A stretch of 64,000 bases of DNA from Zygnema circumcarinatum SAG 698-1b (Eukaryota; Plantae; Zygnematophyceae): NCBI GenBank assembly GCA_037447605.1, contig CM074804.1:1922001-1986000 (forward strand), in the 5' to 3' direction. A program made the translations under genes and the position numbers. The notes under the pieces were generated by a model. It did not search any database. It saw only the letters and a list, made by a program, of their open reading frames with translations, and was not told the origin of the DNA. Shown here piece by piece: positions 7,357-28,050 of the stretch. Each line of letters starts with the position of its first letter. Positions within the stretch are counted from its first letter, which is position 1.

Positions 7357-9427
7357 ATGGCTGAAGAGGAGGGAAAGAAGCCTATCGTTTGCGACAATGG
7401 CTCAGGAATGGTGAAGGTAGGCGAAGGGCATAGCATCTGTCGCGACTTGAACTTCGACTTGGCCTTTTTTTTCCGGCCATGGCAGCTGCAACATTACAGC
7501 ATTGCAGTGTGTTGATCTCTGGCAACCTTGTTTTCGTTGCAGGCTGGATTTGCCGGCGATGATGGACCAAATGCTGTCTTTCCCAGTGTGGTTGGATGGC
7601 CGAAAGCCAGCTACAATCGCATTCACGGTGCAGCAGATGACAAGCCGTTCTTTGTTGGAGAGGAAGCTCAAGCAAAGCGTGGTGTGCTGTCGCTTAAATA
7701 TCCTATTGAACACGGTATGTTATGATGAGCCGCGCCTTGAATGCGGATTTGATGCATGTGTTTTTGCAATTTTGTTGATCTTCGTACGGGGTTTCTGCTC
7801 TTTGCATTGTCCCTTGTTCGCTTGTTTAAGGGCATTGTTCAACCGCTTATCGTCACTAATGACTGTGCAGGTACTGTCACAAACTGGGATGACATGGAGA
7901 AGATCTGGCACTATACCTTTTTTGATGAATTGCGAGTGGAGCCACAAGAGCATTCTGTCTTACTGACGGAAGCACCAATGAACCCCAAGGCGAACAGGGA
8001 GCGTATGACACAAATTATGTTCGAAACGTTTGCAGTTCCGTCTATGTATGTCGCTATTCAGGCAGTGTTGTCTCTTTACGCCAGTGGACGAACAACTGGT
8101 ACTTCTGCCGCTCACCTCAAATTGAGGCATCTCTTTATGTTTTTGGAACTTGTTCTGAAAGGCAAATCTGCTTGATTGGCGTCGTTTATTTTTTCTCTGT
8201 AACATGGGTGGCCTTTCAACGACCTCTCGTTTGTCTCTCCTTTTGCATATTGTGAATCATGCCCTATTCACTAAATTTGCTGCAGCTGCTAATTTCTCGT
8301 GGCACTGTTTATATTTTTGTATTAACTTCCGCTATTGTAACTTTGCCACTTGATTTATCGCATATTGCACATGTAAAACTTGAATCATTAGTTGCTAATG
8401 CAGTTCTGAAACTTGACTAACGTACAACTTTGGATCTTCACGTGATGACGATGCACATAAGACTTGGGAAAAAAACCTGGATTTGCCTAGATTTTGAAAG
8501 ACAGAATTCTTGCCATGTCGTTTCTGCATGCAGGTGTTGTTCTCGACTCTGGTGATGGTGTCACCCATACCGTACCTATTTATGAGGGTTACACAATGCC
8601 CCATGCAATTACCCGTCTTGACTTGGCCGGTCGAGATTTGACTCATTATCTGGCAACAATTCTCACTGAGAGGGGCTACAAGTTTGAGACCTCCTCAGAG
8701 ATGGAAATTGCCCGCGACATTAAGGAGAAGCTGGCGTATGTGGCGGCAGATTTTGAGGCTGAGTCACAGACAGCGAGGACTGATCCTTCAGTTGAGAAGG
8801 AATATGAGATGCCAGATGGTCAAGTGATCACCATTGGTGATCAGCGCTTCCGTTGCCCAGAAGTCCTGTTCCAGCCATCTCTCCTCGGAAAGGAGTCGTC
8901 TGGTATTCATGAAATTACGTATAACTGCATCATGAAATGTGATGTGGATGCTCGCAAGGATTTGTACGGCAACATTGTCCTTTCAGGTGGATCAACGATG
9001 TTCCCCGGAATGGGTCCTCGCATGAACAAGGAGATGACAAAGCTGGCGCCTGATACCATGAAGGTGAAGGTAGTCACTCCAGTGGAGCGCAAGTACAGTG
9101 TCTGGATCGGAGGATCAATCCTTGCTTCACTCAGCACTTTTGAGCCGGTATGGCAGCGTCAAATCTTCCTCTCTTACCTCCCTCTCGGACACTCCGAATT
9201 TAATCTGCATTTGTCACCTGCATTTTCATCGGTTGCTCTTCTAGGAGGCTGATCAGAACCTTCTTGAGGTTCCTTGAGATTGTCTTCCTTGTCCCTTCTC
9301 TCTTGAAGCTAGTTGATGTACGGCTCTTAAGTAAATGTGTTTCTTGTTTTTTGTCGAACAGATGTGGGTGACTCGGAAAGAGTACGACGAGGTTGGTGCT
9401 GCCATTATTCACAAGAAGTGCTTCTAA
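7357..9427 (+). CDS. ACT: Actin, divergent isoform (379 aa)
   Basis: Exons 7357-7416, 7543-7714, 7871-8098, 8534-9147 and 9362-9427, all GT-AG and phase-consistent. Motifs [67 protein letters not shown]. Three introns sit at the conserved plant actin positions. A 5'UTR leader-intron acceptor is at 7343, with a likely donor at 6736. Confidence 0.96.
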
Positions 9428-11102
9428 GTCGAAGTGTCAAATTTGGTTTCATTTTCCATTCGAATGTCTTCCCCGAGTAATGGGGTTTCTCCACCTGTCC
9501 CCCTCAAGAGGGCAGCAGAATATAGCAGAGTTGTGGATTGCTGTCTTTTGCCACAGCTTGTGGAAGTGACCGATTGGATGAACGCCATGGTGCTATCAAG
9601 ATGGACAAACTTCCACTCCTCCTAACCTCTGTCGGTCGAATTATGAGTGGACAATAGTCGGAGTTCCTTATGTAGCATTTTAGGCCTGAAAGTTGAGCTC
9701 TCCCATTATGATACGTTGCAGATGTAGATGATCACCGATGTTTCTCTCCCCAAATGTTCTCACGGATTCATTTGCTATCAGAGTGTAAATGGAAGTTCTG
9801 TTGTATCCTTCTTTTTCTCTCGATTAGGGTCAAGTTGAACAGCTATACTGTGTGGAAGTGTGTTTCTGTGTGCTGACATGAGTGGGATTTCCTTACTGTG
9901 AGTTAGGGGGTTGAGCTGGTTAGGACGAGAGGGAGGGTTTTTTTGAACTTGTTACGCCCTGAAGAGGCTTTGTGATGTCCACTGAGAACATTTAGGAGCC
10001 GAAAGGATGGTTCTTTTGTCTGTGTTTTGTCTAAGGGCGTTTTCTTATAAACGAGTCAGATGATTTACTGCCTATCAAAAGCCTCCAGCCCCCTCCTTCC
10101 CCATTATCCACCTAATTAGAGGCTGAATTCTGGACGGAGCAGCAGAGAGAGGCATGTGGTCCGATTGTTTAATTTTACTTTCCTCAGGGAGCTTTTTTTT
10201 TACGAATTCCATATGCATAGGGGAAGACTCATGGAGTGATAGCTTGAGGAAGGGATTGTGCATGAGAGGATAAGGTTGTGTTCTTGGAAGAGATTGAAAA
10301 CTTTGTTAGTGCCGTGCATGTGATCTTTGCAAACTTCTTCGCCTTTCCTTGTTGAGTGTATGGCAGCAGCGCAAAATCAGATTTCATGTTATTTCGTCAT
10401 GTAGTTCGATGAATGTCTTGAACATAGAATTTCTGCAAGGCCATCATGTTATTTGGAAGGCATCAATTTTCAAGGACAATCTTTGTTTGCATCTTGTAAG
10501 GCTTTGGATACGTCTAGGATGATAAAGCCTGACGCTCAAGGTAACTTGAGATATTAGGGTTCCTTCAAAATGTGCTTCTGGCTTTTTATCTGAATGATTT
10601 TGTTTTTGACAAGAAACCATATCTTGTCTTTTTCTTTCATGTCCCTTTGTTAAACGTATTTTGGGTTGCACTCTCCCTCCAACCACACCTTCCCACACCG
10701 CCTTGAAAGACGTTCAAGTTCTCATGCAGTGACGAAAGACTGAGGAAGAATATCAGCTCAATGAAATATAATAATTTGCTATTAAGTATAGTAGCCGATG
10801 TTAGACTTAAAAATTGTTCGTAAGTTTGAGTCCAAAACGAATACTCCGTTGACATCGCGATCCTGTTGCGGCGGAAAATTTGCGAAACTTTTTTGTTTAC
10901 TAGACTTCGGGAAGTCTGAATCTTATAATTTCCCTCCGGATAAAAATGTGTTAGTGGTACTTCAAAACAGAAAGACACGTAGTGGAACAAGCCTTAAAGT
11001 ATGAAAGGCTCCTTCCAATGTTTAATATTAGTATGGGATTAAAAACAGGCACATTTGTACAATGAAGTCGGAAAAGTAACAGTATCGTAGCATTTCACGT
11101 TC

Positions 11103-12483
11103 TCACCGCTTTGTCAAGAAGTAAAGCAGGACAACAAAAGCTACACAAGAAATGGCGACTGTGGCCATACTGCGGTTTGATTTTGATTCAAAGACCTGCA
11201 ACAAACCAACATCCCACGCCCTCTAGATAAGAAGTCGAGCTGCTGTTCAATGGATAATCTCGATACTGCTGTGCATTGTATCTCTAACGAGTAATTCTCT
11301 CGAAGCATGGATTTGCGTGAATTCATGGAAGGAAGCCTCGTGGAGATGACAATCCTGCGCACGCTACGGTTTCACTGAATTTATTTATAATCCAGAAGTG
11401 ACTTGAGTTTCTCTGTTCAAGCAAATCCATTACAACATTTCGCAGAAAGATATCCGGCTTACTTTGCCGAAGCGCTCCACTGTTCCTGCCAACACCCGTC
11501 GAGCTCCTTCCATTTCGATCCCCTGTAAAATACACTAACAAAGGACTTTAGGACATCGTCATCATGAATGGACGGGAGGGGACATGAGGGAGGTAAGGAT
11601 GGAAGAAGCCGAGGGCCAAGAGCTAAGAGAGAAGAGAAAAGCATTTTAGACTGAGGCATAATGAAGATACATTGGTTCCATTGATGCGACACTACAACAA
11701 AACAATCACTGAAGTAATGAAATAACAACTCACCAGACCTTCAAGAAACTTATTTTGTGAGTCCACTTCCCCATGGATGTCCCGAGTCAACTGCAAGGGA
11801 TGAAGAAAAGAAGAGAAATCAGGAAAAGAAAATCACAAAAGCACAAAAGGCAGACGATGAAATCCCCCTCTCGCTTCTTTTAGTCCCAGTTTGAACATTT
11901 CCGTTCGAGGCATCCAGACTATGGCTCTGCTCTGAATTTCAAAAGTGCTTTACTGAAACGAGGAAGAAATCAGACGCTTCTAAACGAGGACCTACTTTAA
12001 TTCTACGGCAAATAAAGAAAGGGTAGCCTCCACTTAGCCGGCGTTAAGCACATTGCAATGGTCAATGCTGGTCTAATATGTCAACTGCAAAAGGCCCCAT
12101 AAAGCAAGGAGACAAACCTGTTTTATCAAGCGAGCTCTTCCTTCCAATTCGCTCAGCGACTTCTCGTTGTCTTGCTCTGCTATTTCATTGGTGTAGGATG
12201 ACACCGTTTTCAAACCGCCTACTCCCTCTTCAATGTCAAACGGAGCCCTGCCAGGCCTGGCAGAAAAAAAGATTAATTCAAAGCATGAATTCCTGCTCAA
12301 ACAGATGACGCGAAGGTAAGGCAGACTATCATTGCTGCAATAACAACCACCAATAAACAAATGCTCTGACAGAACAAAGGTTCACTCGATTAATCAACAC
12401 TATGCCACCAATCTACTCAAAATTTTCGTGCATTCAATTTCCCTGAACGAAAGGACTCACCTCTTGTTGTAATTCATCGCCAT
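11103..12483 (-). CDS. BET1: Bet1/BS14-like Golgi Qc-SNARE
   Basis: Exons 12483-12461, 12256-12118, 11790-11734, 11522-11463 and 11195-11103 give MAMNYNKRPGRAPFDIEEGVGGLKTVSSYTNEIAEQDNEKSLSELEGRARLIKQLTRDIHGEVDSQNKFLEGLGIEMEGARRVLAGTVERFGKVFESKSNRSMATVAISCVAFVVLLYFLTKR*. It has a SNARE motif and a C-terminal TM anchor, matching plant BS14/BET11. Confidence 0.9.
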
Positions 12484-12633
12484 TGGCCTTCAAGCCTACC
12501 TCTGCACACTCTAGCAAAAACGAATCTTGCAGATCTTGCAAAAAGCTGCCTTTCGAAGGCTTCTCAGGCCCGATGTTTCAAGAATAAGAAACACGCTTCA
12601 AATTTCTGCTCCTCCTCTTAGAAAGAAGGCCTC

Positions 12634-12642
12634 AAACCCTAA
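12634..12642. promoter_or_regulatory. Telo-box AAACCCTAA near the BET1 5' end (similar boxes at 34081-34088 near HDS and 46316-46324 in UMP kinase intron 1)
   Basis: Exact motif matches near gene 5' ends. Function is inferred from plant telo-box knowledge. Confidence 0.35.
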
Positions 12643-13242
12643 CTTGCAGTAGGAAGCCTCCCGGGCTTTCAGAACCTGCAGGAGCTACAGAAATAGAAAC
12701 CCACCTCCAACTGTTTCCATGGCGGCAGTTCCCGGTTGTTGTCCGCTTAACAAACATTTCCGGACGGAACGTCTATGTGTTCTCCGTACACTGTACGAAT
12801 TATTCCGTACGGAACCTTCCATTCCCGCTTTAGTGTTGTCTTTTCCATCTGTCCCGTGCAGTTTGTAGGTTAACAAAGCGACATGGAACGGTTTGCAGTT
12901 GCCAGTTCCGTCCGGCAGGGCCGCGAAATTCAAAGCCAATTTTCCTTTTTTCGCCGTTGACCGCGGCGGCACCACCGACTGTGGCCACTGTGGGCTTGCC
13001 ACGTGTAAAAATATCCGAGAGTTACAACGTTTCTATTTCTGAATGGTCAAAACCTTAGGTCGGTACGATACTCCGTAGGTCATTTTCAGAAACCAGAGGC
13101 GACTGCTCTGTCGCATTTGTCCGTACACGTTGACCCCTCCCGACTCCTGAGCAAGTAGGGATGTACGGCACCGACATATTCGTACTGAATAAGATTCCGT
13201 ACACGTGAACCGTTACAGTACTGTACAGTTAAGCCCCATTCG

Positions 13243-14127
13243 CAGGCCACTTCAAATAGGGGATTTCGGCTTAAGATAGGGGACTGTCCCCTAACTTGGT
13301 TTTGTAAAAACACGTAAATATGGACTGTACGGACGAAACCGTACACGTACGGACGAGAATTTTGTGGAGACCTTGCTTCATCATTTCCCAACATTGCTAC
13401 CGTCGAGTCTGATTTTTCAGTAATTGGATGGGAGAAAGACGAGTTTCGAAAGAGGTTGACAGACTTTTCATTGGAAGGCATTCTTCACTGCAAACGGTTT
13501 GATAGTTTGAACACTCTTCGAGGGTCTCTTTGAGTAGTTTGCATCACTTCTATAGCTGTCTTGATCAGCCTAAAACTCCTAAGGGAGTGAGACCATTTTT
13601 CATTTCATTTCTAATTTTAGTTCCTATTTCAGTTTTTCTTTTGTGACTACACCTTGAATTTCAGAGGTAATGATTTGGAATAGAGTTTTTGTGAGGAAAT
13701 TTCAAGACTATGATGGATTCTAAAGTGATACTTGGAGTAATTAATGATGGATGGAAAAGGAAATAGAGAGCTTAGGATTGAATCTACAAAGTTTCAGTGC
13801 AATTGGGTTTTTGAATAAGCAACTATATGTTGTGATTGCCAAATGCACAGTTGTTCTAATTGATTGGTAAAATTTACCAATCTATAAGAGTCAAAGAGGT
13901 TGCACCAGTTTCTAAAGCCGTGTTGTTATACCAACAAGTAAAGTTCATATACATCATTGCTATCGTGGTTGCAACTGCAATTCATTTCCTTTTGGTTTTT
14001 AACCAAAAAAATGCTTTTTTGGGGCTTGTGTGGTATTTAAGTTGAAATCACGTAAACTAATCTCAAAATCTTACATAAATAAGCTATTTACGATATTTAG
14101 GGGATCTCCCCTATTTGAAGAGGCCTG
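13243..14127. mobile_element. hAT-type MITE (885 bp)
   Basis: The 21-bp TIR CAGGCC(A/T)CTTCAAATAGGGGA matches at 20/21 positions. The 8-bp TSD CCCATTCG is at 13235-13242 and 14128-14135. The interior is AT-rich with no recognisable coding sequence. Confidence 0.88.
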
Positions 14128-14359
14128 CCCATTCGGAGCGCGGATGAGGGCCGTCAATCGGTTGTACGAATGTACGGATTGAGCCGTGTACTGTAGTGTT
14201 GATCTCTGGCCGTACAGTACTGTGCAGGGGGTGCAGTACTGTACGGATTGATGGCGTACAGAAGTGTACGGCTGCGGTAAAGGCGAGGGGGGAGGTCGTT
14301 CTCGCTGTCCAAATTTATTTTCGTTTTGGTAAGCGCCAAAGGTGCCGTTGGGAATTGGA

Positions 14360-14690
14360 AGGGGGGCGGAGAGGGAGAGAGAGAGGGAGAAAGGAAGAGG
14401 GAGGGAGAGGGAGAGTGGGATAGAGGGAGGGAGAGAGGGAGAGAGTGGGCGAGGGAGAGAGGGAGAGAAGGAGAGAGGGAGGGAGGGAGGGAGAAAGGGA
14501 GAGAGAGGGAGAGAGGAGAGGCAAAAGAAGAGAGAGGGGAGGGGAGGTGAGAGGGCAGGCGGGAATATTGAGGAGAAGTGCGAGATAATCGAAGGGTGGA
14601 TAGAGGGAGCAGCGGGAGAGAGGAGCGATTGGGAAGAGGGACAGAAGGAAGAGAGGAGAGGAGAGGAGAGGTGAGTGGGAAGGAAGAAGG
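14360..14690. repeat. Homopurine (GA/GGGA) low-complexity tract upstream of myosin
   Basis: About 330 bp of A/G-rich simple sequence. Confidence 0.9.
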
Positions 14691-15071
14691 AAGTGTGGCT
14701 GCAGCCATGTGTTTTGAGAGAAGCTCTCGATACAGGTCGGCGTTGCAAGTGCTCGTCGGTTTATCACGCTGACGTAGGCTCGAGGCCACCATTCCGTCCT
14801 GTACGTGAACATAACGGAATTAGGAGTTTGTTAAAACAGGAGCATTTGTCAAGTTAAAGTTGTTTCAGTTTTTTTTTATTATTTTGCGATTCTTCAGGCC
14901 GGGAACCAGTGGTTTCGTGAATTAGTGCGGAAAAAGGGAAAGGAGGCGTACGAATTCTGGATAACTGGAAGCATAGGAAGCGTGCATGGGAAACTTATCG
15001 CGGCTTAATCGTTGATTATAGCAATGATTAAAGAAGGAATACAACGGCGGCGAATTTTCACCTTGATTTAA

Positions 15072-18000
15072 ATGGTATGCTATCCTTGACTTGAAAGCGG
15101 TCTACTGACCTGCAAGCCTGCCAGCTAAACCCCAACTTCATAGTGACCCTTTCATCGCATGGTTAGTCACTAATTGGTTAGATATAGTTTGTAGTGCAGA
15201 AGCACTTCAAGATGTCGTACGAAAATTCGTTGGTTACTGGTTTTTGGCTCTTTTATCTTCTCCTACAATCTTCTTGGATGAAGATTCTTTGTCCATTAAA
15301 CACTCAGATATTAGTAATGCTCAGCCATTGGATCAAGAATTGTAGAAATGACAACGCGATCGTCTCGCGCAGCAAGAGTGTGAATTCGCTCAGAAATGCA
15401 GATGCTTTACCCTTCCGTTAAGTTTTAATCGTGTTTTTTTTCCTTTTCTACCATTACCCGTCATACATTAACTCTCTTCATCCCTACTCGTCTGCTCTCT
15501 CTCGTCCCCCCCTCGCTCTCTGTCTTTCTCTCTCCCCTCGCCTTCTTGAATGTTGCTGGTGTTGCCTGGAACCTGCAGGCAGCTCCTCAGAAATTTGCTG
15601 CTGGAGTGGCAGTTTGGATCCCGGATGAGAAAGAGGTCTTTGTCGAAGGAGCAGTGGTCAGTCAGGACGGTGATCAAGTGGTTGTCCGGAAGGGCGAGGC
15701 GGCAACAAAGCCAGCGAACTTGGTAAAATTTAACTATTTGAGACACTTATTTGCTACAGGAAACGTGCATTCGTTTTTTGTTGGGTTTAAATGTTGGACA
15801 GTGAAGCTTCCGATTCCTGAATCTTGACACCATGTTGTTTACCGCCAAATGCTTGTTACTCTCCAAAGCAGATTTGCAAATTTTCCATCTTGAAATGTAT
15901 AAATAACAACAAGGGAACTCGACTTACATGTTACGGTTCCAGAACTCCATCTATTCTCTTATTCTCTTATAAACTTGAACTCTTAAGAGGTCTACTACAT
16001 GAAATAGCTTCTTTCTTGTTGATGCATTCAACGTATTAGTTGGATATACAAAAGACAAGCAATGATGTGGTATTGATCTCACGACGGTGATGCCATCAAA
16101 TGTACAAAAAATCAACATGGGGAACCACGAAGAACTGGTCACAGAGGACCTAAGGACAATAGAACATATCTTTGAGCGGAAATCTACTTCTAGGCTCAAC
16201 AACTCGGCCCTTGAAAATAACCTTCTATATATTGGACTGAGATATTTGCATGGGAAAACCCAGCATTTCACTCACTAGAGTTTGGGATTTTTTTTCTTTT
16301 TAAGAATTTTCAGGTCACGGTTAGTTCTTCCGACTGCTATGCGAAAGAAGATGAGGTGGTGGATGACATGACGAAGTTGGTGTACCTGCATGAGCCGGGT
16401 GTCCTCAACAACTTGACGATTAAGTATGGCCAGGACAGCATATATGTGAGCATCATGCAATCTATGATCTGTTCTGGATCAAGGTTCTTGAGTATTACAT
16501 TGGGATTCGTGAAAGAAGCAGAGTTACCTCGGAGACATAGCTCTCATTCAACTTGCATTCGTTTTGCATTCACGTTGTGCTAGAGAAAGTTAAAAAGCAA
16601 CTGTTCGCCCGGATCGACTCTTTGATTTTCATGAGTTGAAGAAATTTGAAAATAAGAAGAAAATGTAATTAAAAGAATAATCTGGCCGAATAAGTGTATC
16701 ACTTTCAAGACCATTTGATAGGATCCTTCAAGTGGAAGTAAAACAATTTGCAGATAATGTATCAGAACTATGGCAGAATTTTAGCTCATATGACCATTTT
16801 AGTACCGTACACGAAGCCATTTTTGTCTTGCCTGACAAGTACAGCACTGGGCCACTAGGTGCTCTATAAAAGATGAGGTAAGTCCTTCCTGGTCAACACG
16901 TTGTGATAGACCACCTGCATTTGGCTGATGTAACAGACATACACTGGGAGTATCCTCATCGCTGTCAACCCTTTTCAAAGATTCCCAGAATTTTATAACT
17001 CATCCATGAGAGCCAAGTATCAGAAGGCTCGTTTGGGGGAATTGCCGCCTCATGTATTTGCGGTGGCAGACAGTGCCTATCGGTGAGTTATGACCACCCT
17101 TTTTTATCTTTTCCTCTCTAACTAGTGTGTGTTCCAGCTACGATGTTGTTCCCTTCGACGGTAGCTTGCAGCATTCTAAGCATGGTTTTGCTATGTGTAC
17201 AGCATTTGCAATGCCTTGACCTATGCTCATGTTTTGATTCAGCTAGGATGAACTGACACTGTTAAAAGACTTCAACAATGTGTTGGCCATTTTGGACCCT
17301 TGCAGAGCCATGATGAGTTACAAGCAGAGCCAATCTATTCTTATCAGTGGAGAATCCGGAGCAGGAAAGACGGAGACCACCAAGCTTGTCATGGAGTACC
17401 TGGCAAGTGTGGGGGGGAGAGCGAAAACAAGCGGGCGCAGTGTAGAGTCGCAAGTGCTGGAGGTAAGCATAATGCTTATTGCCAACTCTTAAAAGCTTAT
17501 CATGATTTCTTAGAGTTCAGTGCAAGATGTGGTTATCTCAAAGGGGTGTCAAATCATGTTAGGGCAGTTATGCTTTTACTGGAATGAGCATCACTACCTT
17601 GAAAACAAAACAAAGCAGGGATATCCTGATTTTAGTGCAGGATTTGGGCTTCAGTTCATGGGTCTTTTCATTTTGGCTTTTGGCATGGCAGTCCAATCCC
17701 CTCCTTGAGGCATTTGGAAATGCGAAGACCATCAGAAACAACAATTCAAGGTGAGGCTTGTACCTCGAGATGCGAGCACCCAATTCCTTTGAAAGGTTAA
17801 TGATTTTTCTTCTTAAAATTCACATGTTAAACCTTTAATTGTCGATCCGTAAGTGAACAAGCTTTTAAAGTATTTCCTTGGTGAACCAAATTCACCGAGG
17901 AACTCCGTCATGGCTAGCAAGCTTGTGGACTCTGGTGATACTAGAAACTACTTCCGCTGACTGTGATAATTCTAGAAAACCACACTGCCGAAGGTGACGG

Positions 18001-21000
18001 CGCTCTTCCGAATTGAATTTGGCAGAAAGTGCTGCTAATTTATTGTTCCATGGTTGATGCTTTATGTCCGGAGAACACACTGACTTGAATGAACTGTATG
18101 TGAGTTGTTGATTTTTCATTCTTCCCAAACTTCATATCAGCAAACTTTTCCGCCTCTCCCTCCAGCATGCATACTGATTGCTTGATGTTGAGGGAGGCAA
18201 TGCAGCCGCTTCGGAAAATACATCAAGATTCAGTTCAATAAGTGGGGCCGAGTGTCCGGCGCTTCCATCAAGTCGTACCTTCTCGAGCGATCTCGCGTCG
18301 TCACCATCGCTGATCCCGAACGGAATTACCACTGCTTTTACCAGCTCTGCTATGGGGCATCCCCAGAGGTCGGTAATCTGCACCTGCTTGCACCAACCCT
18401 CACAGTGACATGGGGTAATGGACCAGCAGAACTGTCTCTGTGGTTTATGTTGCATGTAGCTTCATAAGTCTTTTTTTTCTTCCTTTTTTATGACAGCAAA
18501 CCCTCCTGAAGGGCTTCTTTATGGAGCACGTGTGTCCTTAACAGTACTCAAGCGTCGAAAAAAATAAATGCTTTATATGTTTTTGTCACTTATCCATTTG
18601 TAGACTGGGCTTTTGAAGCCACGCAATTTCCTAGCGATACATGCCAGCTTTTCCTTTTCTAGTGTGTTATGTGTTGACACTTATTCTGATATCAACGATC
18701 TTATGAAGCTCTGCTAGTGGCTAGGCTGAAATTGTGAAACTACCTCAGTTAAGCGGCGTGATTGCAGGAGGTGGAGATCTACAAGCTTCCTCCTCAGGCA
18801 GACCGAGCCAAGTCGTTCAACTACCTCAACCAAAGTAGTTGCTTCGAGCTGGATGGAGTCAGCAATGCGGAGGAGTTTTGCCACACAAAGCGGGCAATGG
18901 ATATAATAGGCATCTCCAAAGCGGAGCAGGTGAGGTCAGACTCGTTGTATTAATAATAAGCATGGAACATTGAAAGTGCTGCTCTTTGGGCCTTGAAGAT
19001 TCCGAAGATGCGATTGGTCTTGCTCAACTTAACTTAGCCTTAGCCCTAGCTTCAAGTCTTGTAACTTTTCTTAAGCACCTGTCGATGGCACCTTTACTTT
19101 GTCCATCAACAGTTTTCCTGCAGTTCTTTTCAAGGTAATATGCAGACAATTTGCTGAGAAGGCAACTTAAGTGTTGGGCTGTGCCAGACGTCCATATTTA
19201 AGATTGTATCTGCCATTTTACATCTCGGAAATATTGACTTCGTGGCGGTGGAGGATGACAATAGTCCCGTCCGCCAAGCATCCGAAGCATGCACGGAACA
19301 TCTTCAAGCTGCAGCGCAACTTTTGGGGTAAGCTGCTGCAAAGTCATAGGACTTGTTCTTTGTACTGCCAAAGACCAAACCAAACCAAAGACCAAAGACC
19401 AAAGTGTGGCCTAGGTTTTGTATGTCCTTTGTAAGATGAGGCCAAAGAAAGATTCATGGGAGATTAACTTGTCTATATTATTCGCGTTTCTTCCAACTAG
19501 GCAGTAGGGGGGGGTTCAGCCTTCTTTAGTTGCAAAACCGTCAAGTTCGCATGATTTCTTGACAAAAAAAGGGATGTTTTGAAACTAATGGGTATCTTTT
19601 GCCATACAGGTGTGATGTTGCTGGATTGGAAAAGTCTCTAGTGTACAGATTCAGGAAAATTTCAGGTCAAATTATTCCCACCCTTTTGGATGTGAAGGGA
19701 GCAAGAACTATGAGAGACTCATTGGCAAAGAACCTCTTCTCGAAGCTCTTTGACTGGTACATACTCAACCCCGCCCTGCTGCACAAAATGCATTCCTATG
19801 TCGCGACGAAATTTTGTCTCTTGGGAGGTTAAAGGATGGTACTATTTTCCATCGCACAGCTGAAACAGGAAGCTCAAAGTGTTTCATTTTGTAAATTCAG
19901 AGGAGGGTGCAAAGTCTGGGAGATTATGCTGGCCAAATTCTGAAATCTACATGTGTTCTGAGATTGGATTGAATTACAGGATTGTGGCGAAGGTGAATAA
20001 CTCCATTGGAGAAGATCATCACTCGGAGATTTCGATCGGCGTCTTAGATATCTACGGCTTTGAGCACTTCAAAGTAAACAGGCATGTCATGTTTCCTTTG
20101 CAGCTCGTTGACTGACTAGCCAGTCTCTTGCTCGCAATCTTGGGCCATTGCATTCCTGATCTCATTCGTGGTCGTTCGGGCCGACTTCTAATCAGCATGA
20201 AGTAATGCCGATGTGCAGTTTTGAGCAATTTTGCATCAACCTCGCCAACGAAAAGCTTCAGCAGCATTTCAACATGGTAAGTGCTCAGTCTCTATTACAG
20301 ATGTGGGAGACTGTTTGCGTTTATTTGCATGTGGTAAGCGGAGTTGGCTTTGAATTGTTTTTGGCTGCAGTTCGGACTGATTTCTTCTCCGTTTCTGCTC
20401 CTTGGAGAGATTAGGCATAGATTTGACGAAGCATTTATTTTCAACTAAACAGCTAAACATCAGTGCCGCTCTTTCCTTGTACATAACGCTGGTGGTCTAT
20501 CCCAGATTCTTTAATCGATCCTGGGTCTATCCAGGCTTACAGCTTACAACTGGCGTAATTTTGGGCCTTGCGTTTCCATATGCAGCACGTTCTTAAGATG
20601 GAACAAGAGGAGTATGAGAGAGAGGAGATCAACTGGAGTCGAATTCCTTTTTCGGATAACCAGGACTGTCTAGATCTCATTGAAAAGGTTCGATTACAGA
20701 ACTTCGTCTCTGTTTAGTTAGCCATATAGTCACAGAGGTATAAACAGATCTGGTGCCATGTAAACAGCGAGGGCCATTCATTTTAACAATGAATGGAGAC
20801 GTCACCCTGCTTGCTTGTACGACCAACATTACCACCGGATGCCAAGTCTCCAGTAATGAGAGCTTGTTGTGGGGGTTTTAGGGTTGTTCTGACTGCATGG
20901 ATACATGGGGGGAGGTCTCGTGCAGGACAAGGGAGGAATTCTCTCAATTCTTGACTCCGACTGGTGAGTTGCCGTCCTTAAATGTTTTAGTTGCGTTGGA

Positions 21001-24000
21001 TAATCGTCCACTGTCAAGTGGATGACTGTCTTTTTTTTCCTTTGTTGTAGTATGCTATATGCAGCTTTACATGGGCTCATGTTCCATCGATGCGTCTTCA
21101 GTTCATAAATCTCTTTCCTTTCCTTTTCTACATATCTTGAAACACATGATCTTGTTGCCTGTGCGTTGTTCTGGACCGTTCTCACCATTGGAGGTAGTGT
21201 TGTTTGCGTTGTGTCCATAGCAAGCTGGGCACAAAGGCCCCCAAAGATTTCACTCGCACACTGCAGCAGCAGTTCTCCTCTCACAGGCGCTTTTATATGG
21301 GGAAATCCTCTCGCACGGATTTCACGCTTGAGCATTACGCGGGAAAAGTAAACATCTACTGCTCAACGTGGTTAAACTGTTTGAACTTGTTTTGTTCATG
21401 GTGGTTGGTCGTCACATTGTTTTGAGCTAAGGCTAAGTGATAATGTTGGTCGTAATGTTGCTCTCATTTTTCAGCCAGCACTTGGCCTTTGCAGGTTACT
21501 TATAGCACAGAAGAGTTTATGTCGAAAAATTTGGATGCCGTAAACCCGGAACATCACAAGCTCCTTTCAGCCTCGACAAATGAGCTCATCGCTTCAATGT
21601 TTCCAAAGGGTGGAGACTTGGAAATGACCAATCAATTCATGTCTCTTGGACTCTCGTTCAAGGTAAGAAACTTCATTTCTTTTTCCTTTTCAAGTTGTGA
21701 ACGCTTCACCTAAAGACTTCGCATTTCTGATAGATAGAATGTCCAGTAGATACTGGCTTCCTTTGCGCTTTATATTTCGTCTTGAAGGAGGGGTATAGTA
21801 GACCCCCCTATATGTCAAGAACTGTATGAGTATAGGCGGCGCTAAACCAAAATTACGAAGTTGTATTTTTCCTCTGTTGCAGAAGCAACTGGCTGAGCTG
21901 ATGGAAACACTGAATGAAACGGAGCCCATGTACATCCGTTGCGTTAAACCGAACTCAAAGAATCAGCCGCGGACTTTTGAGCGCCAGCTCGTTATGACGC
22001 AGCTTAGATCTGGGGTGGGTTTTTCTGTCATTTTTCTTGTCTGTTGAATGGGAAACTGTAGTCATCCAGGAACAGAAAATGCCTTCCTCAGCTCCGGTAG
22101 GAGATTATTCTACATGTATATGTGAATATGCATGTAATATTTTTGTGTATGTTGCATGTAGATATCAATATAAACACATACATTCTTTCTTGAGTACATA
22201 AATAGTAAGTACATATGTGTGTGTGTGTGTGTGTGTGTGTGTTTATGCTATATAATCATAAAGCATAAACATAAGTAAATATAAGGGTTGGCGCTGCATT
22301 GTCTCCCCACCAGTGCAGGGGGTGCTGGAGGCAGTGCGAATGTGCTCGGCGGGCTACCCCACGAGGAGGGCCTTTCAGGACTTCGCCGACCGCTTCCGAA
22401 TCCTCGCGAGAATGCCGCTCACTATGGAGTATGGGGCATTCCTCGCAGTCAAAATTTTACAAATTGAACTTAAACAAACAAATATGAAGACAAAAATAAT
22501 TTATCCTGGTCTCAATAAAAATATGAAACGTTTTCCTCGTCTTTTTCTCTCAGGCTTCCTTGTGTTTTAGACGGGCCTTCCAAACCCACTAGCATACGCG
22601 GGTCAATCCCCATGAAGGGACTTAGAGAGGGAAGGAGCCCGTGATGCAACAACCGCTGAAAGAGGAAACGGAGCGCAAAGATGTTTTAGTTTTGTCTGAG
22701 TTGTGGGGTCATGTATGTTCCTGTCTTGTTTTTCTTGCAAGCATTATTAGCCATTATTGTGAACCACCGTTATGGACCTGCATCTTGCCGCTGAAAAAAC
22801 TAGCTAGTTTTCTAGCCTGTTTGCTCTCCTGTTGCCAACAATGACTCGCCATGTTGTTATGTGTCTTTCGTCCTTCTTTTTCTTCCCTTTATTTTTCGGT
22901 CGTGCTCTTTGTTGGTTGCCCTGTGCAGCCTGAGCGAAAAGAAAGTTTGCCAGCTGCTGATGGAAAGGACTAATCTTTCCGACTACCAGGTAAGCAAACC
23001 GTTATGGACCCTCCCATTTCTCCTCTTGTGTAAAACGCATGTGCTTTCGCTCTGTTCAAGCAATTTTCTCACAATCAGTCTGCCTAGCTCTAGTGACGAA
23101 GCAGTGAAGCATTTAATGTCCTTTTCAGTTATACTATTGATTAGGATATAATCAATAGGATTAAATTAGGATATTAATCATAAAATGCCGGTGCTGTTGT
23201 GAGCAGATTGGAAAAACCAAAATTTTCTTGAGAGCTGGTCAGATGGTTCAGTTGGACACTCTGCTCTCCAATCAAAGGGAGGCAGCCACAAAGATTCAAA
23301 AGCACGTTCGCCGCTTTTGGTTCTTAAGGGAACGGAGTGGGGCCTCTCTGCGTCTTCAGACTTGGTGGAGAGGTGGGTCGTACTATGCTATGTAGATGAC
23401 TCAGGGGAGGATTTGTAGAGCCTTTGAAACTCCACCCACTTCAATCATGGTCCAAGAGTTTCTTCTTTTGGGATTTTAACCGCAGGCCTACGTAGTGATT
23501 CGGTTATGACCTCGTGTTTTGCTGTGTATAATTCAATTATAGTTCGCCTTGGAAACTCTCATGCCCAGTTATTGCTAAGTCGTTTGCGGTCGGTTTGATT
23601 GTTCGTCCTGGCAGGTGTGTTGGGAAAGTTGGCTGAAAAGAGTCGGAGAGAGGCCCACACGAAAGCAGCCCTTGTTTTCCAGAAGAATGCGCGCATGCGG
23701 AAGGAACGAGCCTATTTTCTGGCTCTGAAACGAGCGGCAAAGCTCTGTCAGAAGCTGCTCCGGCAACGGTTGGAGGACAACATGGAGCTTGCAATGAGCA
23801 TCCGGGTGCGCGCCTTTTTGCTATCACGGAACTTGCTCACCGAAGTTTGTGTCTTAAAGGTTACTTATTTCAGTGGAGGAGCGGTGGTGTTAGCATCCGA
23901 AACTTACTGTGTCTGGAGATGAGAGTACCTTAGCTGCAGTGGCTGAGTCTGGACATGGTCTGTCAGTCCTGAAATTGAGACAAGGCACGAAAGCTAGCTA

Positions 24001-27000
24001 CACTGCGTACGAAAAATGGCAGCGGAAAAGACAACGACCGTCAGTAGTAGTCAACGATAGTGACCATCCTGATGGGTCCATCAATACCCATTCAGGACCA
24101 TTCTTATCTACGACATCCACATACAACCTCTTTGCGCCTCCCCTCCCCCACCCGAACCCCCCCCACTTCTCTCTCTCTCCCTCTCTCTCTCTCCCTCACT
24201 CGCTTTCTCCCCCTCTCTCTTTCTCTCTCTCCTTCAATCTTCCTCTGATGAAATTGCACGGCGGTGCAGGCAGGAGTGGACCGCAAGCTGGCCAGTAAAG
24301 CAGAGCGATTTGCGAGGGCGAAGCTGGACGCTGCTCTTGCGCAGATGCGCGGCTTTGAGGCGCAGGTCGACCAGAAGGCGCGGGAGCTCGTCGGCCTTCA
24401 AGCAGACCTCGCCCTCGCAAGGGAGGCAGCAACGGGGGCCGCTCTCGCAGTCGAGAAGATTACGGGAGAGAGGGAGGCAATTTTGGACTCGCTCATGGTA
24501 CTTGCAGGGCAGCAGGGTCTGTCAAGTAGGGGAATGCTCGTTGCTGGGGATGCTTTTGTTCAACGTGTGGGGATTGTCTGTGTGATTATGGATGGATGGA
24601 TGGATGGATGGATGGATGGATGGATGGATGGATGGATGGATGGATGGATGGATGGATGGATGGGTGGATGGATGGATGGATGGATGGATGGATGGATGGA
24701 TGGATGGATGGATGGATGGATGGATGGATGGATGGATGGGTGGATGTCATAGATGCTTTTTGAGTTACTATCATCTAGGTAACCTGAGCTGTGGGCTCAT
24801 TAAGTTTTGGTTGTGAGGGAGGGGATTATTCTACGGGCAACCACCTGCAAGATACGTAAACTCCCTCTGTTCGTTTGAGTGCAGGCTCAAGAGGAGGAAG
24901 AAAGGAGAGAAGAGAAGGAGGAGATAGATTTGGAAATGAGGGAACTTCAGGAGCGGCTTCAGGAAATGCAGGATAAGCTTGCTGAGTAAGTTCCCAACTG
25001 CCACTTTATTACTATCTGACCACTTGTATTACTGGATTTCCATTGCTTGAGCCGGCGCAAAAAGAGAAAGAAAGAAGAGGTGAAAGGGGGAGGGGGGTTG
25101 CGATACATTTTTCTGTTGCACTATCTCTGTTATGAATGCTCAGTAGGGCCATGTTCGACTTGGGGCCTGCAGGAAAGAGCAGGAGGTCAAAGCCTTGAGT
25201 AATCGGCTTGCTGCTATACCAACAAATGTGAAAATTCCAGAGATGCCTCTCGACGAGCAGCAGGTGCATACTTGTCAAAGTCTTCACGAGTGAATTGACT
25301 CGTTTCCTCGACTCCTTTGTATTGTTTGAAGCTTCTTTTGAAGAGGGAAACCAGATCTATGACAATCACAAGTTCGAAACAGTAACTGGACCTTTAGGCG
25401 GGTTGAAAGGAAACACTGCAATTCTCTTGTACATTCTTGTCGCATATCGGTTTATACCAGTATACGACGCTTCTCCATATATCTCACTATCTCCCTGCCA
25501 GATTGGTTCGGATGCAGTACACATGGCCGACTGTTTGTCCGACTGGGTCTTCTGATAAGCAGGACCGCCACCACATTCAAGCCAAAACTTCCTATATTTG
25601 AAAATGCTGCCCTAGCACCTGTTTACCCTTGTTCTGGTGGCGTTCCATTGGCTAATGATTAGTCTGTTTTGTGGATTTCAGGCCACGCTATTACGAGAGA
25701 TTGGCAACAGCAATTTGGGGTTTGAAAATGGCCATGCAGTCGCTGCTTCGATGGTTTTCAAGGCCCTTCTGAGGTGGAAAATTTTCGAGGCAGAGAGGAC
25801 CAACACATTTGATCGGGTGGTATACACTTTCCAACAAGCAGCTCGGAATGGCAACTATAGCACTCTCTCTTACTGGCTCTCCAACACCATCACCCTTTAC
25901 TATCTTGTTGACAATGTGATCTATGAAGCGGGTTCCACGAAAAGTATTCGGCCGTTTTCCCTCTTCAGCAAACGTGAAACTAGCTCGCAGCGTGTCGAAC
26001 ATGTAGACACTATGCTGTTCAAGCTGCAGTTAGGCACGTCGGTTGAACGGCTATATGTTACAATTCGTGATTCTGTGAAAGCAGAGCTCAACAGTCACCT
26101 CACATTGGTGAGTTCTTACAACTTACGAACCTGAAAAAAAAAAAAAAAAAAAAATACTGAAAGCTCTTCAAACTCTTAAGAGCACCCTAACTTACAGTTG
26201 TGATTACGAATGGGAATGTGTCAGGGACCCCAGCCTATGGCTAATGGGGATGGAGGGAGCTCAGCCTCCACTCCCAACAAAAGGCTCCTCTCTCGGAACA
26301 CAAGTTCTTTGCGCGCTCAAGTGGACGATAACTGGAGAGCAATTCTCGATTGTCTCAAAAACGTTCTCACTGTCATGCGGCGGAACTATATTCCTCCGCT
26401 CCTTGTGCACTTCCTTCTGAAACAGCTTCTAAACTTTATTGACACGACGGTCTTCAACAGGTCCGGAGCAAGAATGGCCATGCTTAGACACTTCGATACT
26501 TTGCTTTTCCTTGTTGTCTGGTTGGTTTACTTTTTGAATGCTTGCGTACTGCTCATTATCAGTTTCTTTGCCGTTTGAATGCCAGTCATTGCGAAATATG
26601 TAGCCTACAGAGAGAACTAGCGAATGGATCTAATTTTTCACTCAAATGAATCATAAGACCTCGCGGAACTCTTATTTGGGGAACATGGGTCTGAACGTGG
26701 GTCATTATAAATCAAACAGAGGACGAAAGCTATGCATTGATAGGGTCGGACTTTCTCTATTTGGTGCATACCGGTCTTGAAGCAGCATGAGAGTGTAACG
26801 TCGGGAGGAGAAAGTAACACCTTTAACCTCAAACCTCCAAGCGAGCTGTTAAACATTAAAATTCTGACCCAGGGTTCGCTGATGTCCAATGCCGAAGTCG
26901 CAGTTTGATGGTGCGAAGTCCTTGGTGCCCATGCACATACAGCAATGGCGTGGCTATGGGAGAGGGACTTTCGAAGGTGATCGAGTGGCTCTCAGTGGAG

Positions 27001-28050
27001 GTAGACGAGTGGTTAGCCATGCAGCTTGGACCAGAGACTCCCCCCTTGAAGAAAGAGCTTTGCCACATTCAGCAGGCTATCTTCTTTCTGGTAGGTGCAC
27101 TTACGGTTGGTGGCAAGTCACCAACTAACTTCTGGGTGATTAAACATTACTTTATTCCTTCGCTTTCCTCCTCTATCGTTCTCCCTCTCCCTCTCCCTCT
27201 CCTCTTCCTCTGCCTCTGCCTCTGCCCCTCTCTCTCTCCCTCGCTATCTCTCCCTCCCTCTCGCTCTCCCCTCCTCCCCCCCATCCCTCCCCCTTGTTCC
27301 CCCTCTCCCCCTCTCTCTCCGCCTGTCTCTCCCTCCCCCTTCCTCTCGCTCAATCGATGACAGTTCTTCTTCTTCCGATTTTATCAGTTGATAGATGACA
27401 AGCCGAAGCTGAGCCTCGAGGACATTCGGCAGCTGTGCCCCGCTCTGAGCATGAACCAGCTCGTGCACATCTGCATATGGTACGACGACGATAAGCGCAC
27501 CTCCCAGGGAGTGGAGCCCGCCGTCATTGAGCTCATGTGGGCCCACATGCTGGAGGACTCGCCCATGCAGCTGCGGGAGGACGACAGGTGACTGTGCTTG
27601 CCTCTCCTATATGGGTGCTTATATGATGCTCTTTGGAATAGAGTGAGGATGCTGATGCTGATGCTGATGCTGATGCTGATGCTGATGCTGATGCTGATGC
27701 TGATGCTGATGCTGATGCTGACGGATGCTGTGTGGCCAAACAGCTCTCCAGGAGAGGCTCGGGACCAGCTCGGAATTCAGGGCAAGAGGAGGGAAGAGCA
27801 TTGGTATAGTCTTGCAGTGTGTTCAAAAGCTTTGACTGCGACGCGTTGATTGATAAGGGGGTGGTTTCACTTGGATGGCAGGATACCCTTCGGGATTGAT
27901 GAGATCGTGGCCTCTATGATGAATTTTGAAATCGATGAAGTGCAGCCCCCTGGGGAGCTGCTTCAAGCCGGCCTCCATTTTTTGCTACAGAACACCAACG
28001 CAACCCACTCAGGGAAGCACCTCCACTGGCGGATGCCCTCCATAGGTTAG
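15072..28050 (+). CDS. Myosin XI (SH3-like N-terminus, motor, about 4 IQ, short coiled coil, DIL-type tail), about 1389 aa
   Basis: 29 phase-consistent exons: 15072-15074 (ATG only, inferred), 15579-15722, 16314-16445, 16937-17082, 17306-17462, 17692-17750, 18206-18368, 18768-18929, 19188-19327, 19610-19756, 19980-20081, 20219-20276, 20586-20687, 20926-20963, 21221-21347, 21495-21662, 21883-22014, 22319-22428, 22929-22989, 23207-23372, 23615-23805, 24270-24497, 24885-24985, 25173-25263, 25682-26107, 26225-26460, 26904-27090, 27388-27587, 27858-28050. Motifs [31 protein letters not shown], and tail YWLSN and LCPALS. Confidence 0.95.
16065..16190 (+). repeat. Dispersed repeat fragment in myosin intron 2 (inverted copy at 32954-33082)
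   Basis: GATGTGG(T/C)ATTGATCTCACGA...GAAATCTACTTCT aligns with the reverse complement of 32954-33082, about 80% identical by eye. Confidence 0.75.
22216..22243. repeat. (GT)n microsatellite in myosin intron
   Basis: Direct inspection. Confidence 0.9.
24588..24746. repeat. (GATG)n tetranucleotide microsatellite in myosin intron
   Basis: About 39 near-perfect units with occasional GGTG variants. Confidence 0.95.
27648..27721. repeat. (GATGCT)n hexanucleotide microsatellite in the last myosin intron
   Basis: About 12 perfect units. Confidence 0.95.

What the first reader, a model, noticed from the sequence alone, without database searches (positions are those of the whole stretch)
7357..28050. 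Linked divergent actin and divergent myosin XI with reciprocal interface charge changes: candidate private track-motor pair
Seen: the two genes are 5.6 kb apart, in the same orientation, separated only by a Golgi SNARE. The actin N-terminus gains two lysines (EEEGKK). Myosin loop 2 is [12 protein letters not shown] (21603-21638): net negative and lacking the Lys of the usual ...SKF end. The cardiomyopathy loop gains basic residues ([11 protein letters not shown]). Established: loop 2 basic residues contact the acidic actin N-terminus, and loop-2/loop-3 charge tunes velocity in Chara myosin XI. Functional gene clustering is uncommon in plants. Inference: a co-evolved actin-myosin XI module dedicated to one process. 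This is the best candidate for an undescribed system here, but linkage alone could be chance.
Basis: partly seen in the sequence, partly recalled or inferred. Interest (0 to 1): 0.75.

Follow-up and report, generated by a model that had tools for sequence, protein, structure and literature searches.

The report
Odd actin beside odd myosin XI
A green alga has an unusual actin gene about 6 kb from an unusual myosin XI motor gene; each belongs to its own conserved family, but nothing yet shows that they work as an exclusive track-and-motor pair.

Summary
**Observation.** The sequence observations hold. A 5-exon, 379-aa actin (7357-9427, +) starts [14 protein letters not shown]-like gene lies on the minus strand. 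A multi-exon class XI myosin (about 15.1/15.6-28.05 kb, +) has loop 2 [12 protein letters not shown] at exactly 21603-21638. The myosin is transcribed and spliced in four studies.

**New here.**
- The actin belongs to a conserved, apparently undescribed "KK" clade. At least five other organisms carry it, at 79-87% identity. It is about 74% identical to ordinary actin.
- The clade has 23 fixed differences, concentrated in the D-loop, the longitudinal filament contacts and the myosin footprint.
- The myosin belongs to a divergent XI subfamily shared with Closterium and Mesotaenium.

**Against a co-evolved pair.**
- Closterium orthologues share the basic cardiomyopathy loop (+5), the loop-2 charge (-1) and the missing Lys before the loop-2 Phe. 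No KK actin was retrieved from Closterium, and no actin lies within 10 kb of its myosin.
- The actin keeps its three N-terminal acidic residues.

**For a pair.** One relative (SRR9302961) has both genes, and its myosin loop 2 is even more acidic (-3).

**Linkage.** Linkage in that relative is unresolved: its actin is followed by a SEC14-like gene and a second actin copy.

**Verdict.** Two real lineage-specific cytoskeletal genes. Pairing is an untested hypothesis, at about 0.2.

No note on other DNA was found.

The parts
7357..9427 (+). Divergent 'KK-type' actin gene. Five exons: 7357-7416, 7543-7714, 7871-8098, 8534-9147, 9362-9427. Product 379 aa.
   Evidence: Hand-built model with GT-AG introns. 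Identity is 87% to P0009, 83% to P0011 and P0017, and 73-75% to conventional actins. It forms a monophyletic clade with a long stem.
7357..7416 (+). Actin exon 1, encoding [20 protein letters not shown]. The N-terminus keeps three acidic residues and has two lysines where plant actins have I-Q.
   Evidence: The KK motif is conserved in P0009, P0017, P0011 and P0123.
7543..7714 (+). Actin exon 2, with the remodelled and lengthened D-loop ([20 protein letters not shown]).
   Evidence: Clade-specific fixed changes R37W, M44R, V45I and an inserted His.
11106..12300 (-). SNARE-like gene (Bet1-like by eye), with several small exons and a C-terminal membrane helix.
   Evidence: Minus-strand open segments. 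No Pfam hit on the exon pieces. Weak V-SNARE_C lead, score 0.78.
15579..23374 (+). Myosin XI N-terminal SH3-like domain, motor domain and first IQ motifs, in 19 exons. The start-codon exon upstream of 15579 is not resolved.
   Evidence: Junctions come from spliced contigs of four runs. Myosin_N Pfam hit. Motor identity is 56% to Closterium and 54% to Chara corallina XI.
19644..19676 (+). Cardiomyopathy-loop segment [11 protein letters not shown].
   Evidence: The region is net +5 here and +5 in the Closterium orthologues.
20082..20218 (+). GC-AG intron in the myosin motor region.
   Evidence: The junction is seen in all four runs.
21603..21638 (+). Myosin loop 2, [12 protein letters not shown].
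   Evidence: Exact translation. Exon 21495-21662 has both junctions in four runs.
23593..28050 (+). Myosin neck, coiled coil and globular tail. Conserved exon blocks lie at about 23593-23808, 24267-24476, 25171-25266, 25682-26110, 26294-26461, 26902-27093, 27385-27585 and 27874-28050 (stop TAG). Exact junctions are not determined.
   Evidence: Collinear tblastx with the orthologue on L011. tblastn with Closterium and Mesotaenium tails. phmmer hits to myosin XI tails. Weak DIL hit.
30489..32303 (+). SEC14-like (CRAL-TRIO) gene. This is context: its homologue lies directly next to the KK actin in a relative.
   Evidence: Pfam CRAL_TRIO_N and CRAL_TRIO. tblastx to L003.

Best explanation
Two separately conserved, lineage-specific cytoskeletal genes are neighbours in this streptophyte (probably zygnematophycean) alga.

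**The actin.**
- It belongs to an undescribed 'KK' clade of divergent actins.
- Its fixed changes fall in the D-loop, in the longitudinal subunit contacts (residues 204, 289, 319) and on the surface that myosins and other actin-binding proteins use.
- It therefore most likely builds filaments with their own stability and their own set of binding partners, alongside a conventional actin. This step is inferred.

**The myosin.**
- It is a functional-looking class XI motor of a divergent subfamily shared with Closterium and Mesotaenium.
- Its low-charge loop 2 predicts weak electrostatic attraction to actin. By analogy with Chara myosin XI, that fits a fast, low-affinity motor. This step is inferred.

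**The adjacency.** It is most simply explained by chance or local rearrangement. Exclusive pairing is not shown.
For: **Actin clade.**
- Searches give five full-length members, including the window. All have the KK N-terminus, support is 100, and the stem branch is long.
- P0013 (on L003) is a further member known only from its exon 3-5 fragment.
- One search lists the 23 clade-specific fixed differences.
- Relatives' full-length copies sit on intron-less 1.4-1.6 kb contigs, so they are transcribed.

**Myosin.**
- It is spliced in four studies.
- Catalytic motifs are intact.
- In the tree, window + Closterium has support 95*, and adding Mesotaenium gives 99*, all within class XI.

**Subfamily-wide loop features.**

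**No actin near the Closterium myosin.** None within 10 kb, and no myosin near the odd Closterium actin.

**Literature.** Low loop-2 charge goes with high velocity in Chara XI (bioRxiv 10.1101/2021.05.06.442907).
Against: - A relative with the KK actin also has the orthologous myosin, with an even more acidic loop 2. This fits a coupled change.
- About half of the clade-specific actin changes lie on or near the known myosin footprint: the N-terminus and residues 26, 37-45, 88-99, 331/333 and 353/354. The footprint list comes from my own knowledge of actomyosin cryo-EM work and was not computed here.
- Chance adjacency of an actin and a myosin within two genes is a priori rare, roughly under 1% per genome by my rough estimate.
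- The presence of a conventional actin in this genome was not checked.
Confidence: 0.55

Rival explanations
1. Dedicated track-motor pair. The KK actin forms a separate filament population. This myosin's acidic, Lys-poor loop 2 is repelled by the strongly acidic N-terminus of conventional actin but tolerated or attracted by the EEEGKK N-terminus. The motor would therefore run preferentially on KK filaments.
For: - The two genes are adjacent in the window.
- They co-occur in sample SRR9302961. There the orthologue's loop 2 is SEESAPEVGQ (-3) and the post-Phe segment GLSFK has lost its basic residues, as in the window.
- The KK motif is conserved across the clade.
- Several fixed actin changes sit at myosin contact sites.
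Against: - Most of the myosin interface peculiarities are also in Closterium, where no KK actin was retrieved.
- The actin keeps three N-terminal acidic residues.
- The window's loop-2 charge differs by only one unit from Chara and Spirogloea XI.
- The comparison rests on a single evolutionary transition.
- Conserved linkage is not shown.
Confidence: 0.2
2. Shared-neighbourhood regulation without isoform specificity. Actin, a Bet1-like SNARE, myosin XI and a SEC14-like lipid-transfer gene form a small trafficking-related neighbourhood. It may be co-regulated, but the motor uses any actin.
For: - Four genes with membrane-traffic or cytoskeleton roles lie within 25 kb.
- The SEC14-like gene is also next to the KK actin in a relative, 0.8 kb away and in the opposite orientation.
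Against: - The SNARE identity is only a weak lead.
- Gene order and orientation differ between the two species.
- No expression comparison was possible.
- Functional clustering of this sort is rare in eukaryotes.
Confidence: 0.15
3. The actin is a decaying or non-polymerising actin-like copy and so is irrelevant as a track.
For: It is only about 74% identical to conventional actin, and its D-loop is heavily altered.
Against: - The reading frame is intact and the splice sites are canonical.
- The DNGSG and DSGDG phosphate loops and the KKCF C-terminus are kept.
- The clade is conserved in at least five other organisms, with clade-specific residues fixed, and transcripts exist in relatives.
Confidence: 0.05

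Closest known systems
Chlamydomonas/Volvocales NAP1 (novel actin-like protein) alongside conventional actin IDA5
   Same: A markedly divergent actin paralogue (60-75% identity to conventional actin) kept in a green-lineage clade, presumably beside a conventional actin (PMC6789165; bioRxiv 10.64898/2026.04.22.720131).
   Different: - No NAP sequence appeared among the best 120 hits of any of the three actin searches, whereas conventional chlorophyte actins did. The KK clade is probably an independent origin; direct comparison was not done.
- NAP1 has no known neighbouring or dedicated myosin.
Chara corallina / Chara braunii myosin XI (fast streaming motors)
   Same: A class XI motor whose loop 2 carries little or no net positive charge (Chara 0, window -1). 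In Chara, loop-2 charge tunes velocity.
   Different: - The window motor is only 54% identical to Chara XI and belongs to another subfamily, with Closterium and Mesotaenium.
- It lacks the Lys before the conserved Phe and the KPK of loop 3.
- There are no kinetic data.
Apicomplexan actin-1 / MyoA (divergent actin served by a specialised myosin)
   Same: The idea of a divergent actin used by a lineage-specific motor.
   Different: In apicomplexans the divergent actin is the main actin, and pairing is shown biochemically. Here pairing is only a hypothesis, the genes are of plant type, and a conventional actin probably coexists (not checked).
Closterium myosin XI-like proteins (GJP44698.1, CAI6007082.1 and relatives)
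   Same: The nearest named relatives of the window motor (56% identity; clade support 95*). They share the +5 cardiomyopathy loop, the -1 loop 2, LDSxC and the GK-type loop 3.
   Different: The Closterium post-Phe segment keeps KR (NSLGKRFK, +3, against +1 here). No actin lies within 10 kb of the gene.

Membership tests
Actin (PF00022), conventional actin group | Full-length alignment to actins, with the phosphate-binding loops (DNGSG, DSGDG) and the C-terminal ..KCF kept | tested here: met
   The 379-aa protein aligns end to end at 73-75% identity to conventional actins. Exon 4 matches PDB actins at E=1e-104. The motifs are visible in the translation.
Actin (PF00022), conventional actin group | Branches inside the tight cluster of conventional plant and algal actins | tested here: not met
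   It forms a separate five-member clade (support 100) on a long stem (0.35 + 0.13). A zygnematophyte conventional actin (Netrium P0014) sits on the other side.
NAP-type divergent actin of Volvocales | Orthology to Chlamydomonas NAP1 | tested here: inconclusive
   No NAP sequence was retrieved to compare. None appeared in the best 120 hits of three searches that did list conventional chlorophyte actins.
Myosin class XI | N-terminal SH3-like domain plus a motor with intact P-loop, switch I and switch II | tested here: met
   Myosin_N at E=1.8e-9. [23 protein letters not shown] and DIYGFE are all in the RNA-supported model.
Myosin class XI | IQ neck, coiled coil and a DIL-type globular tail | tested here: met
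   - The first IQ motifs are read.
- The tail exon finds myosin XI tails: Mesotaenium, Closterium, Chara, Brassica.
- The DIL Pfam hit on one exon is below the cut-off (E=9e-4).
- The number of IQ motifs and the coiled-coil exons are not fully resolved.
Myosin class XI | Groups with class XI motors in a tree | tested here: met
   It nests among streptophyte XI sequences, in a subclade with Closterium (95*) and Mesotaenium (99*). No class VIII or class V outgroup was included.
Isoform-specific actin-myosin pair | Co-occurrence of the two partners across taxa | tested here: inconclusive
   Both are present in the window genome and in sample SRR9302961. The myosin subfamily also occurs in Closterium and Mesotaenium, from which no KK actin was retrieved. 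Annotation gaps cannot be excluded.
Isoform-specific actin-myosin pair | Conserved genomic linkage | tested here: inconclusive
   - In L003 the actin is followed by SEC14-like(-) and a second actin copy.
- L011 starts inside the myosin, and the 2 kb after it matches nothing in the window.
- In Closterium no actin lies within 10 kb of the myosin.
Isoform-specific actin-myosin pair | The motor prefers the cognate actin (motility, ATPase) | not testable with these tools
   This needs purified proteins.

The most novel reading that the evidence does not exclude
[quoted passage not shown] A myosin XI lineage lost the basic residues of loop 2 and became selective for that system. This would be a natural orthogonal track-motor pair encoded side by side.
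Probability: 0.2. Interest if true: 0.8.

Novelty: new variant of a known kind. Interest (0 to 1): 0.45.

Why it matters
**If the pairing were real.**
- It would be the first plant-lineage case of a myosin selective for one actin isoform.
- It would provide a natural orthogonal transport system.
- It would explain why such a divergent actin is retained.

**Without pairing.**
- The searchable literature mentions divergent green-lineage actins only for Chlamydomonadales. It does not describe this KK clade.
- The clade has fixed changes in the D-loop and in the longitudinal contacts.
- The acidic-loop-2 myosin XI subfamily is likewise undescribed there.
- Both are concrete, testable material for the open question of how cells sort actin filaments and motors into separate networks.

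Tried and rejected
**Scans and searches that gave little.**
- Two degenerate DNA-pattern scans of JGI metagenomes looked for KK-specific motifs, to obtain genomic contigs for synteny. The first found nothing. The second found five other "GWP" divergent actins at 51-65% identity, none of the clade.
- A literature search for the two SRA accessions, to name the relatives, found nothing.
- A findings search by sequence for a conventional actin in this genome was blank.
- Pfam on the SNARE exon pieces gave nothing.

**Ideas considered and rejected.**
- Closterium's odd actin P0416 as the KK orthologue. The tree places it with conventional actins, and it keeps conventional residues at the clade-specific sites.
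- The in-frame TTG at 15546 and the ATG at 15550 as the myosin start. TTG is not a start codon here, and the ATG is in the wrong frame.

**Not done.**
- The full spliced proteins could not be given to the big searches, because they have no reference and I did not type long sequences. The window's own annotated proteins were never retrieved.
- Co-expression could not be tested: one reads call, limited to 6 kb.
Full report
**Observation**

The actin gene model was built by hand from the sequence. Its exons are 7357-7416, 7543-7714, 7871-8098, 8534-9147 and 9362-9427 on the + strand. All introns are GT-AG, and the product is 379 aa beginning [17 protein letters not shown].

The myosin lies downstream on the same strand. 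I laid contigs of four runs from four different studies of the same organism on 17000-22999. They are spliced and give the exon junctions through most of the motor. This includes both junctions of exon 21495-21662, which holds loop 2.

The assembled N-terminal domain, motor and first IQ motifs (19 exons, 15579-23374) have intact P-loop, switch I and switch II. Window 21603-21638 translates exactly to [12 protein letters not shown], and [11 protein letters not shown] lies at 19644-19676.

The start-codon exon is not resolved, because there is no in-frame ATG upstream in the first recognisable exon.

The gene in between lies on the minus strand (about 11106-12300). By eye it looks like a Bet1-type SNARE. 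Profile searches found nothing on its small exons, and the Atlas gave only a weak V-SNARE_C lead.

**The actin**

It is 73-75% identical to conventional plant and algal actins. It is 87% identical to P0009 and 83% to P0011 and P0017. P0123 and the exon fragments P0007 and P0013 belong with these.

All full-length members share three features:
- MA[DE][DE][DE][12 protein letters not shown] at the N-terminus;
- a remodelled D-loop, one to two residues longer (GWP[KR]..RIHG..DK.FF);
- TPVERKY and [15 protein letters not shown] near the C-terminus.

In a tree they form one clade (support 100) on a long stem, apart from all conventional actins. The conventional side includes the Netrium digitus actin P0014. 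The full-length relatives sit on intron-less 1.4-1.6 kb contigs, so they are transcripts.

I found 23 positions where the clade is fixed for a residue never seen in 20 conventional actins. They fall into three groups:
- the D-loop: R37W, M44R, V45I and an inserted His;
- the longitudinal contacts: A204S, I289A, A319K;
- the surface around residue 26, residues 88-99, 331/333 and 353/354.

From my own knowledge of actomyosin structures, that last surface overlaps the myosin footprint. It also overlaps the binding sites of many other actin-binding proteins.

The N-terminus keeps three acidic residues, as plant actins do, and adds two lysines. Its net charge goes from about -3 to -1.

No named member of the clade exists in the databases searched. 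The papers I could search mention divergent green-lineage actins only for Chlamydomonadales. The Spirogyra genome paper states only that Spirogyra has two actin orthologues in different co-expression modules.

**The myosin**

A tail exon searched against 1.8 billion representatives found its nearest relatives in Mesotaenium endlicherianum and several Closterium strains, at 48-54% identity. This suggests the window comes from a zygnematophyte. Earlier notes of the scan call it a green or streptophyte alga.

The motor is 56% identical to the Closterium proteins, 54% to Chara corallina XI and 50-54% to land-plant XI. In a tree it groups with Closterium (95*) and then Mesotaenium (99*). This divergent subclade sits inside streptophyte class XI, apart from the canonical Spirogloea, Chara and land-plant motors.

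**The charge claims**

- **Loop 2 proper, between the two conserved Phe.** Net -1 here, -1 in Closterium, -1 in one further reference (P0240), 0 in Chara and Spirogloea, and 0 to +2 in the remaining references.
- **Loop 2 plus the segment after the Phe.** The window is the least positive of the database references (0, against +1 to +4).
- **Lys before the Phe.** Missing here (QF) and in Closterium (AF).
- **Cardiomyopathy-loop region.** Net +5 here and +5 in Closterium.
- **Other odd features.** LDSxC and the GK-type loop 3 that lacks KPK are also shared with Closterium.

Most of what looks special in this motor's actin-binding face is therefore a subfamily trait.

**Tests of the pairing idea**

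1. **Closterium.** The orthologous myosin has no actin within 10 kb on either side. The one odd Closterium actin, P0416, is not of the KK clade and has no myosin within 10 kb. Searches ranked by the diagnostic N-terminal 80 residues returned no KK-type protein from Closterium, Mesotaenium or Spirogloea. These annotated proteomes are in the collection. Missing gene calls cannot be excluded.
2. **Relative SRR9302961 (about 38% G+C).**
   - Contig L003 carries KK-actin exons 3-5. About 0.8 kb downstream, in the opposite orientation, lies a homologue of the window's SEC14-like gene (window 30.5-32.3 kb). After that comes the start of a second actin copy with a different N-terminus, [21 protein letters not shown].
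   - Contig L011 from the same sample carries a collinear orthologue of this myosin, from the [19 protein letters not shown] exon to the last exon. It has much shorter introns.
   - That orthologue's loop 2 is SEESAPEVGQ (-3), followed by FTSIGLSFK. It is even more acidic and lacks the same basic residues.
   - So the two genes co-occur there, and the acidic loop 2 is a shared trait of this lineage.
   - Gene order differs from the window directly downstream of the first actin copy. Both contigs end inside genes, so the second copy could still be followed by the myosin. Linkage conservation is unresolved.
3. **More contigs.** Scans for further genomic contigs of the clade failed.

**Reading**

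Both genes are real, intact and lineage-specific. Each would merit description on its own.

The evidence for an exclusive pair has three parts:
- the adjacency in one genome;
- co-occurrence in one relative;
- one shared loss of loop-2 basic residues.

Together these amount to a single evolutionary event. Against it, most of the motor's peculiarities predate that event and occur where no KK actin is known. The charge changes are also not mirror images of each other.

A low-charge loop 2 has a simpler precedent. In Chara myosin XI, adding positive charge to loop 2 lowers velocity. The motor may therefore simply be tuned for speed on any actin.

My probabilities are:
- about 0.55 for neighbours without exclusive pairing;
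- 0.2 for a dedicated pair;
- 0.15 for a co-regulated trafficking neighbourhood without isoform specificity.

Co-expression, the presence of a conventional actin in this genome, and complex modelling could not be done with the calls available.

Noticed in passing
window 30489-32303 (+) and L003:1881-2837 (-): A SEC14-like (CRAL-TRIO) gene lies 21 kb from the KK actin in the window. Its homologue lies 0.8 kb from the KK actin in a relative, in the opposite orientation. Actin-SEC14 proximity may therefore be older than actin-myosin proximity.
   Followed up: partly
L003:3229-3451: The relative has a second, tandem KK-clade actin copy. Its N-terminus is [21 protein letters not shown], with one Lys and no EEE. 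The N-terminus therefore varies between paralogues.
   Followed up: partly
window 20082-20218: A GC-AG intron in the myosin motor, supported by spliced contigs of four runs.
   Followed up: yes
window 22314 vs 22319: Two AG acceptors lie 5 nt apart (CCACCAG|TGCAG|GGGG). One run's contig uses the upstream one, which would shift the frame. This is probably a minor or aberrant isoform.
   Followed up: partly
window 24588-24736 and 27648-27719: Long microsatellites lie inside myosin introns: (ATGG)n of about 150 bp and (GATGCT)12. Further low-complexity GA-rich tracts lie at about 14.2-14.7 kb and 27.1-27.4 kb.
   Followed up: no
L004 (Closterium sp. NIES-67, P0416): A Closterium actin has an insertion of about 38 residues, rich in Gly and Ala, in subdomain 4, plus many substitutions. 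It is a different, independent divergent actin, or possibly a gene-model artefact.
   Followed up: partly
L006-L010 (JGI/ENA metagenome contigs): Other actins with a Trp in the D-loop stem (GWP) exist in metagenomes. They are only 51-65% identical to the window actin and unrelated to the KK clade.
   Followed up: no
window 15072-15161: Two candidate one-codon first exons (ATG followed by GT) lie upstream of the first recognisable myosin exon. The true start was not determined.
   Followed up: partly
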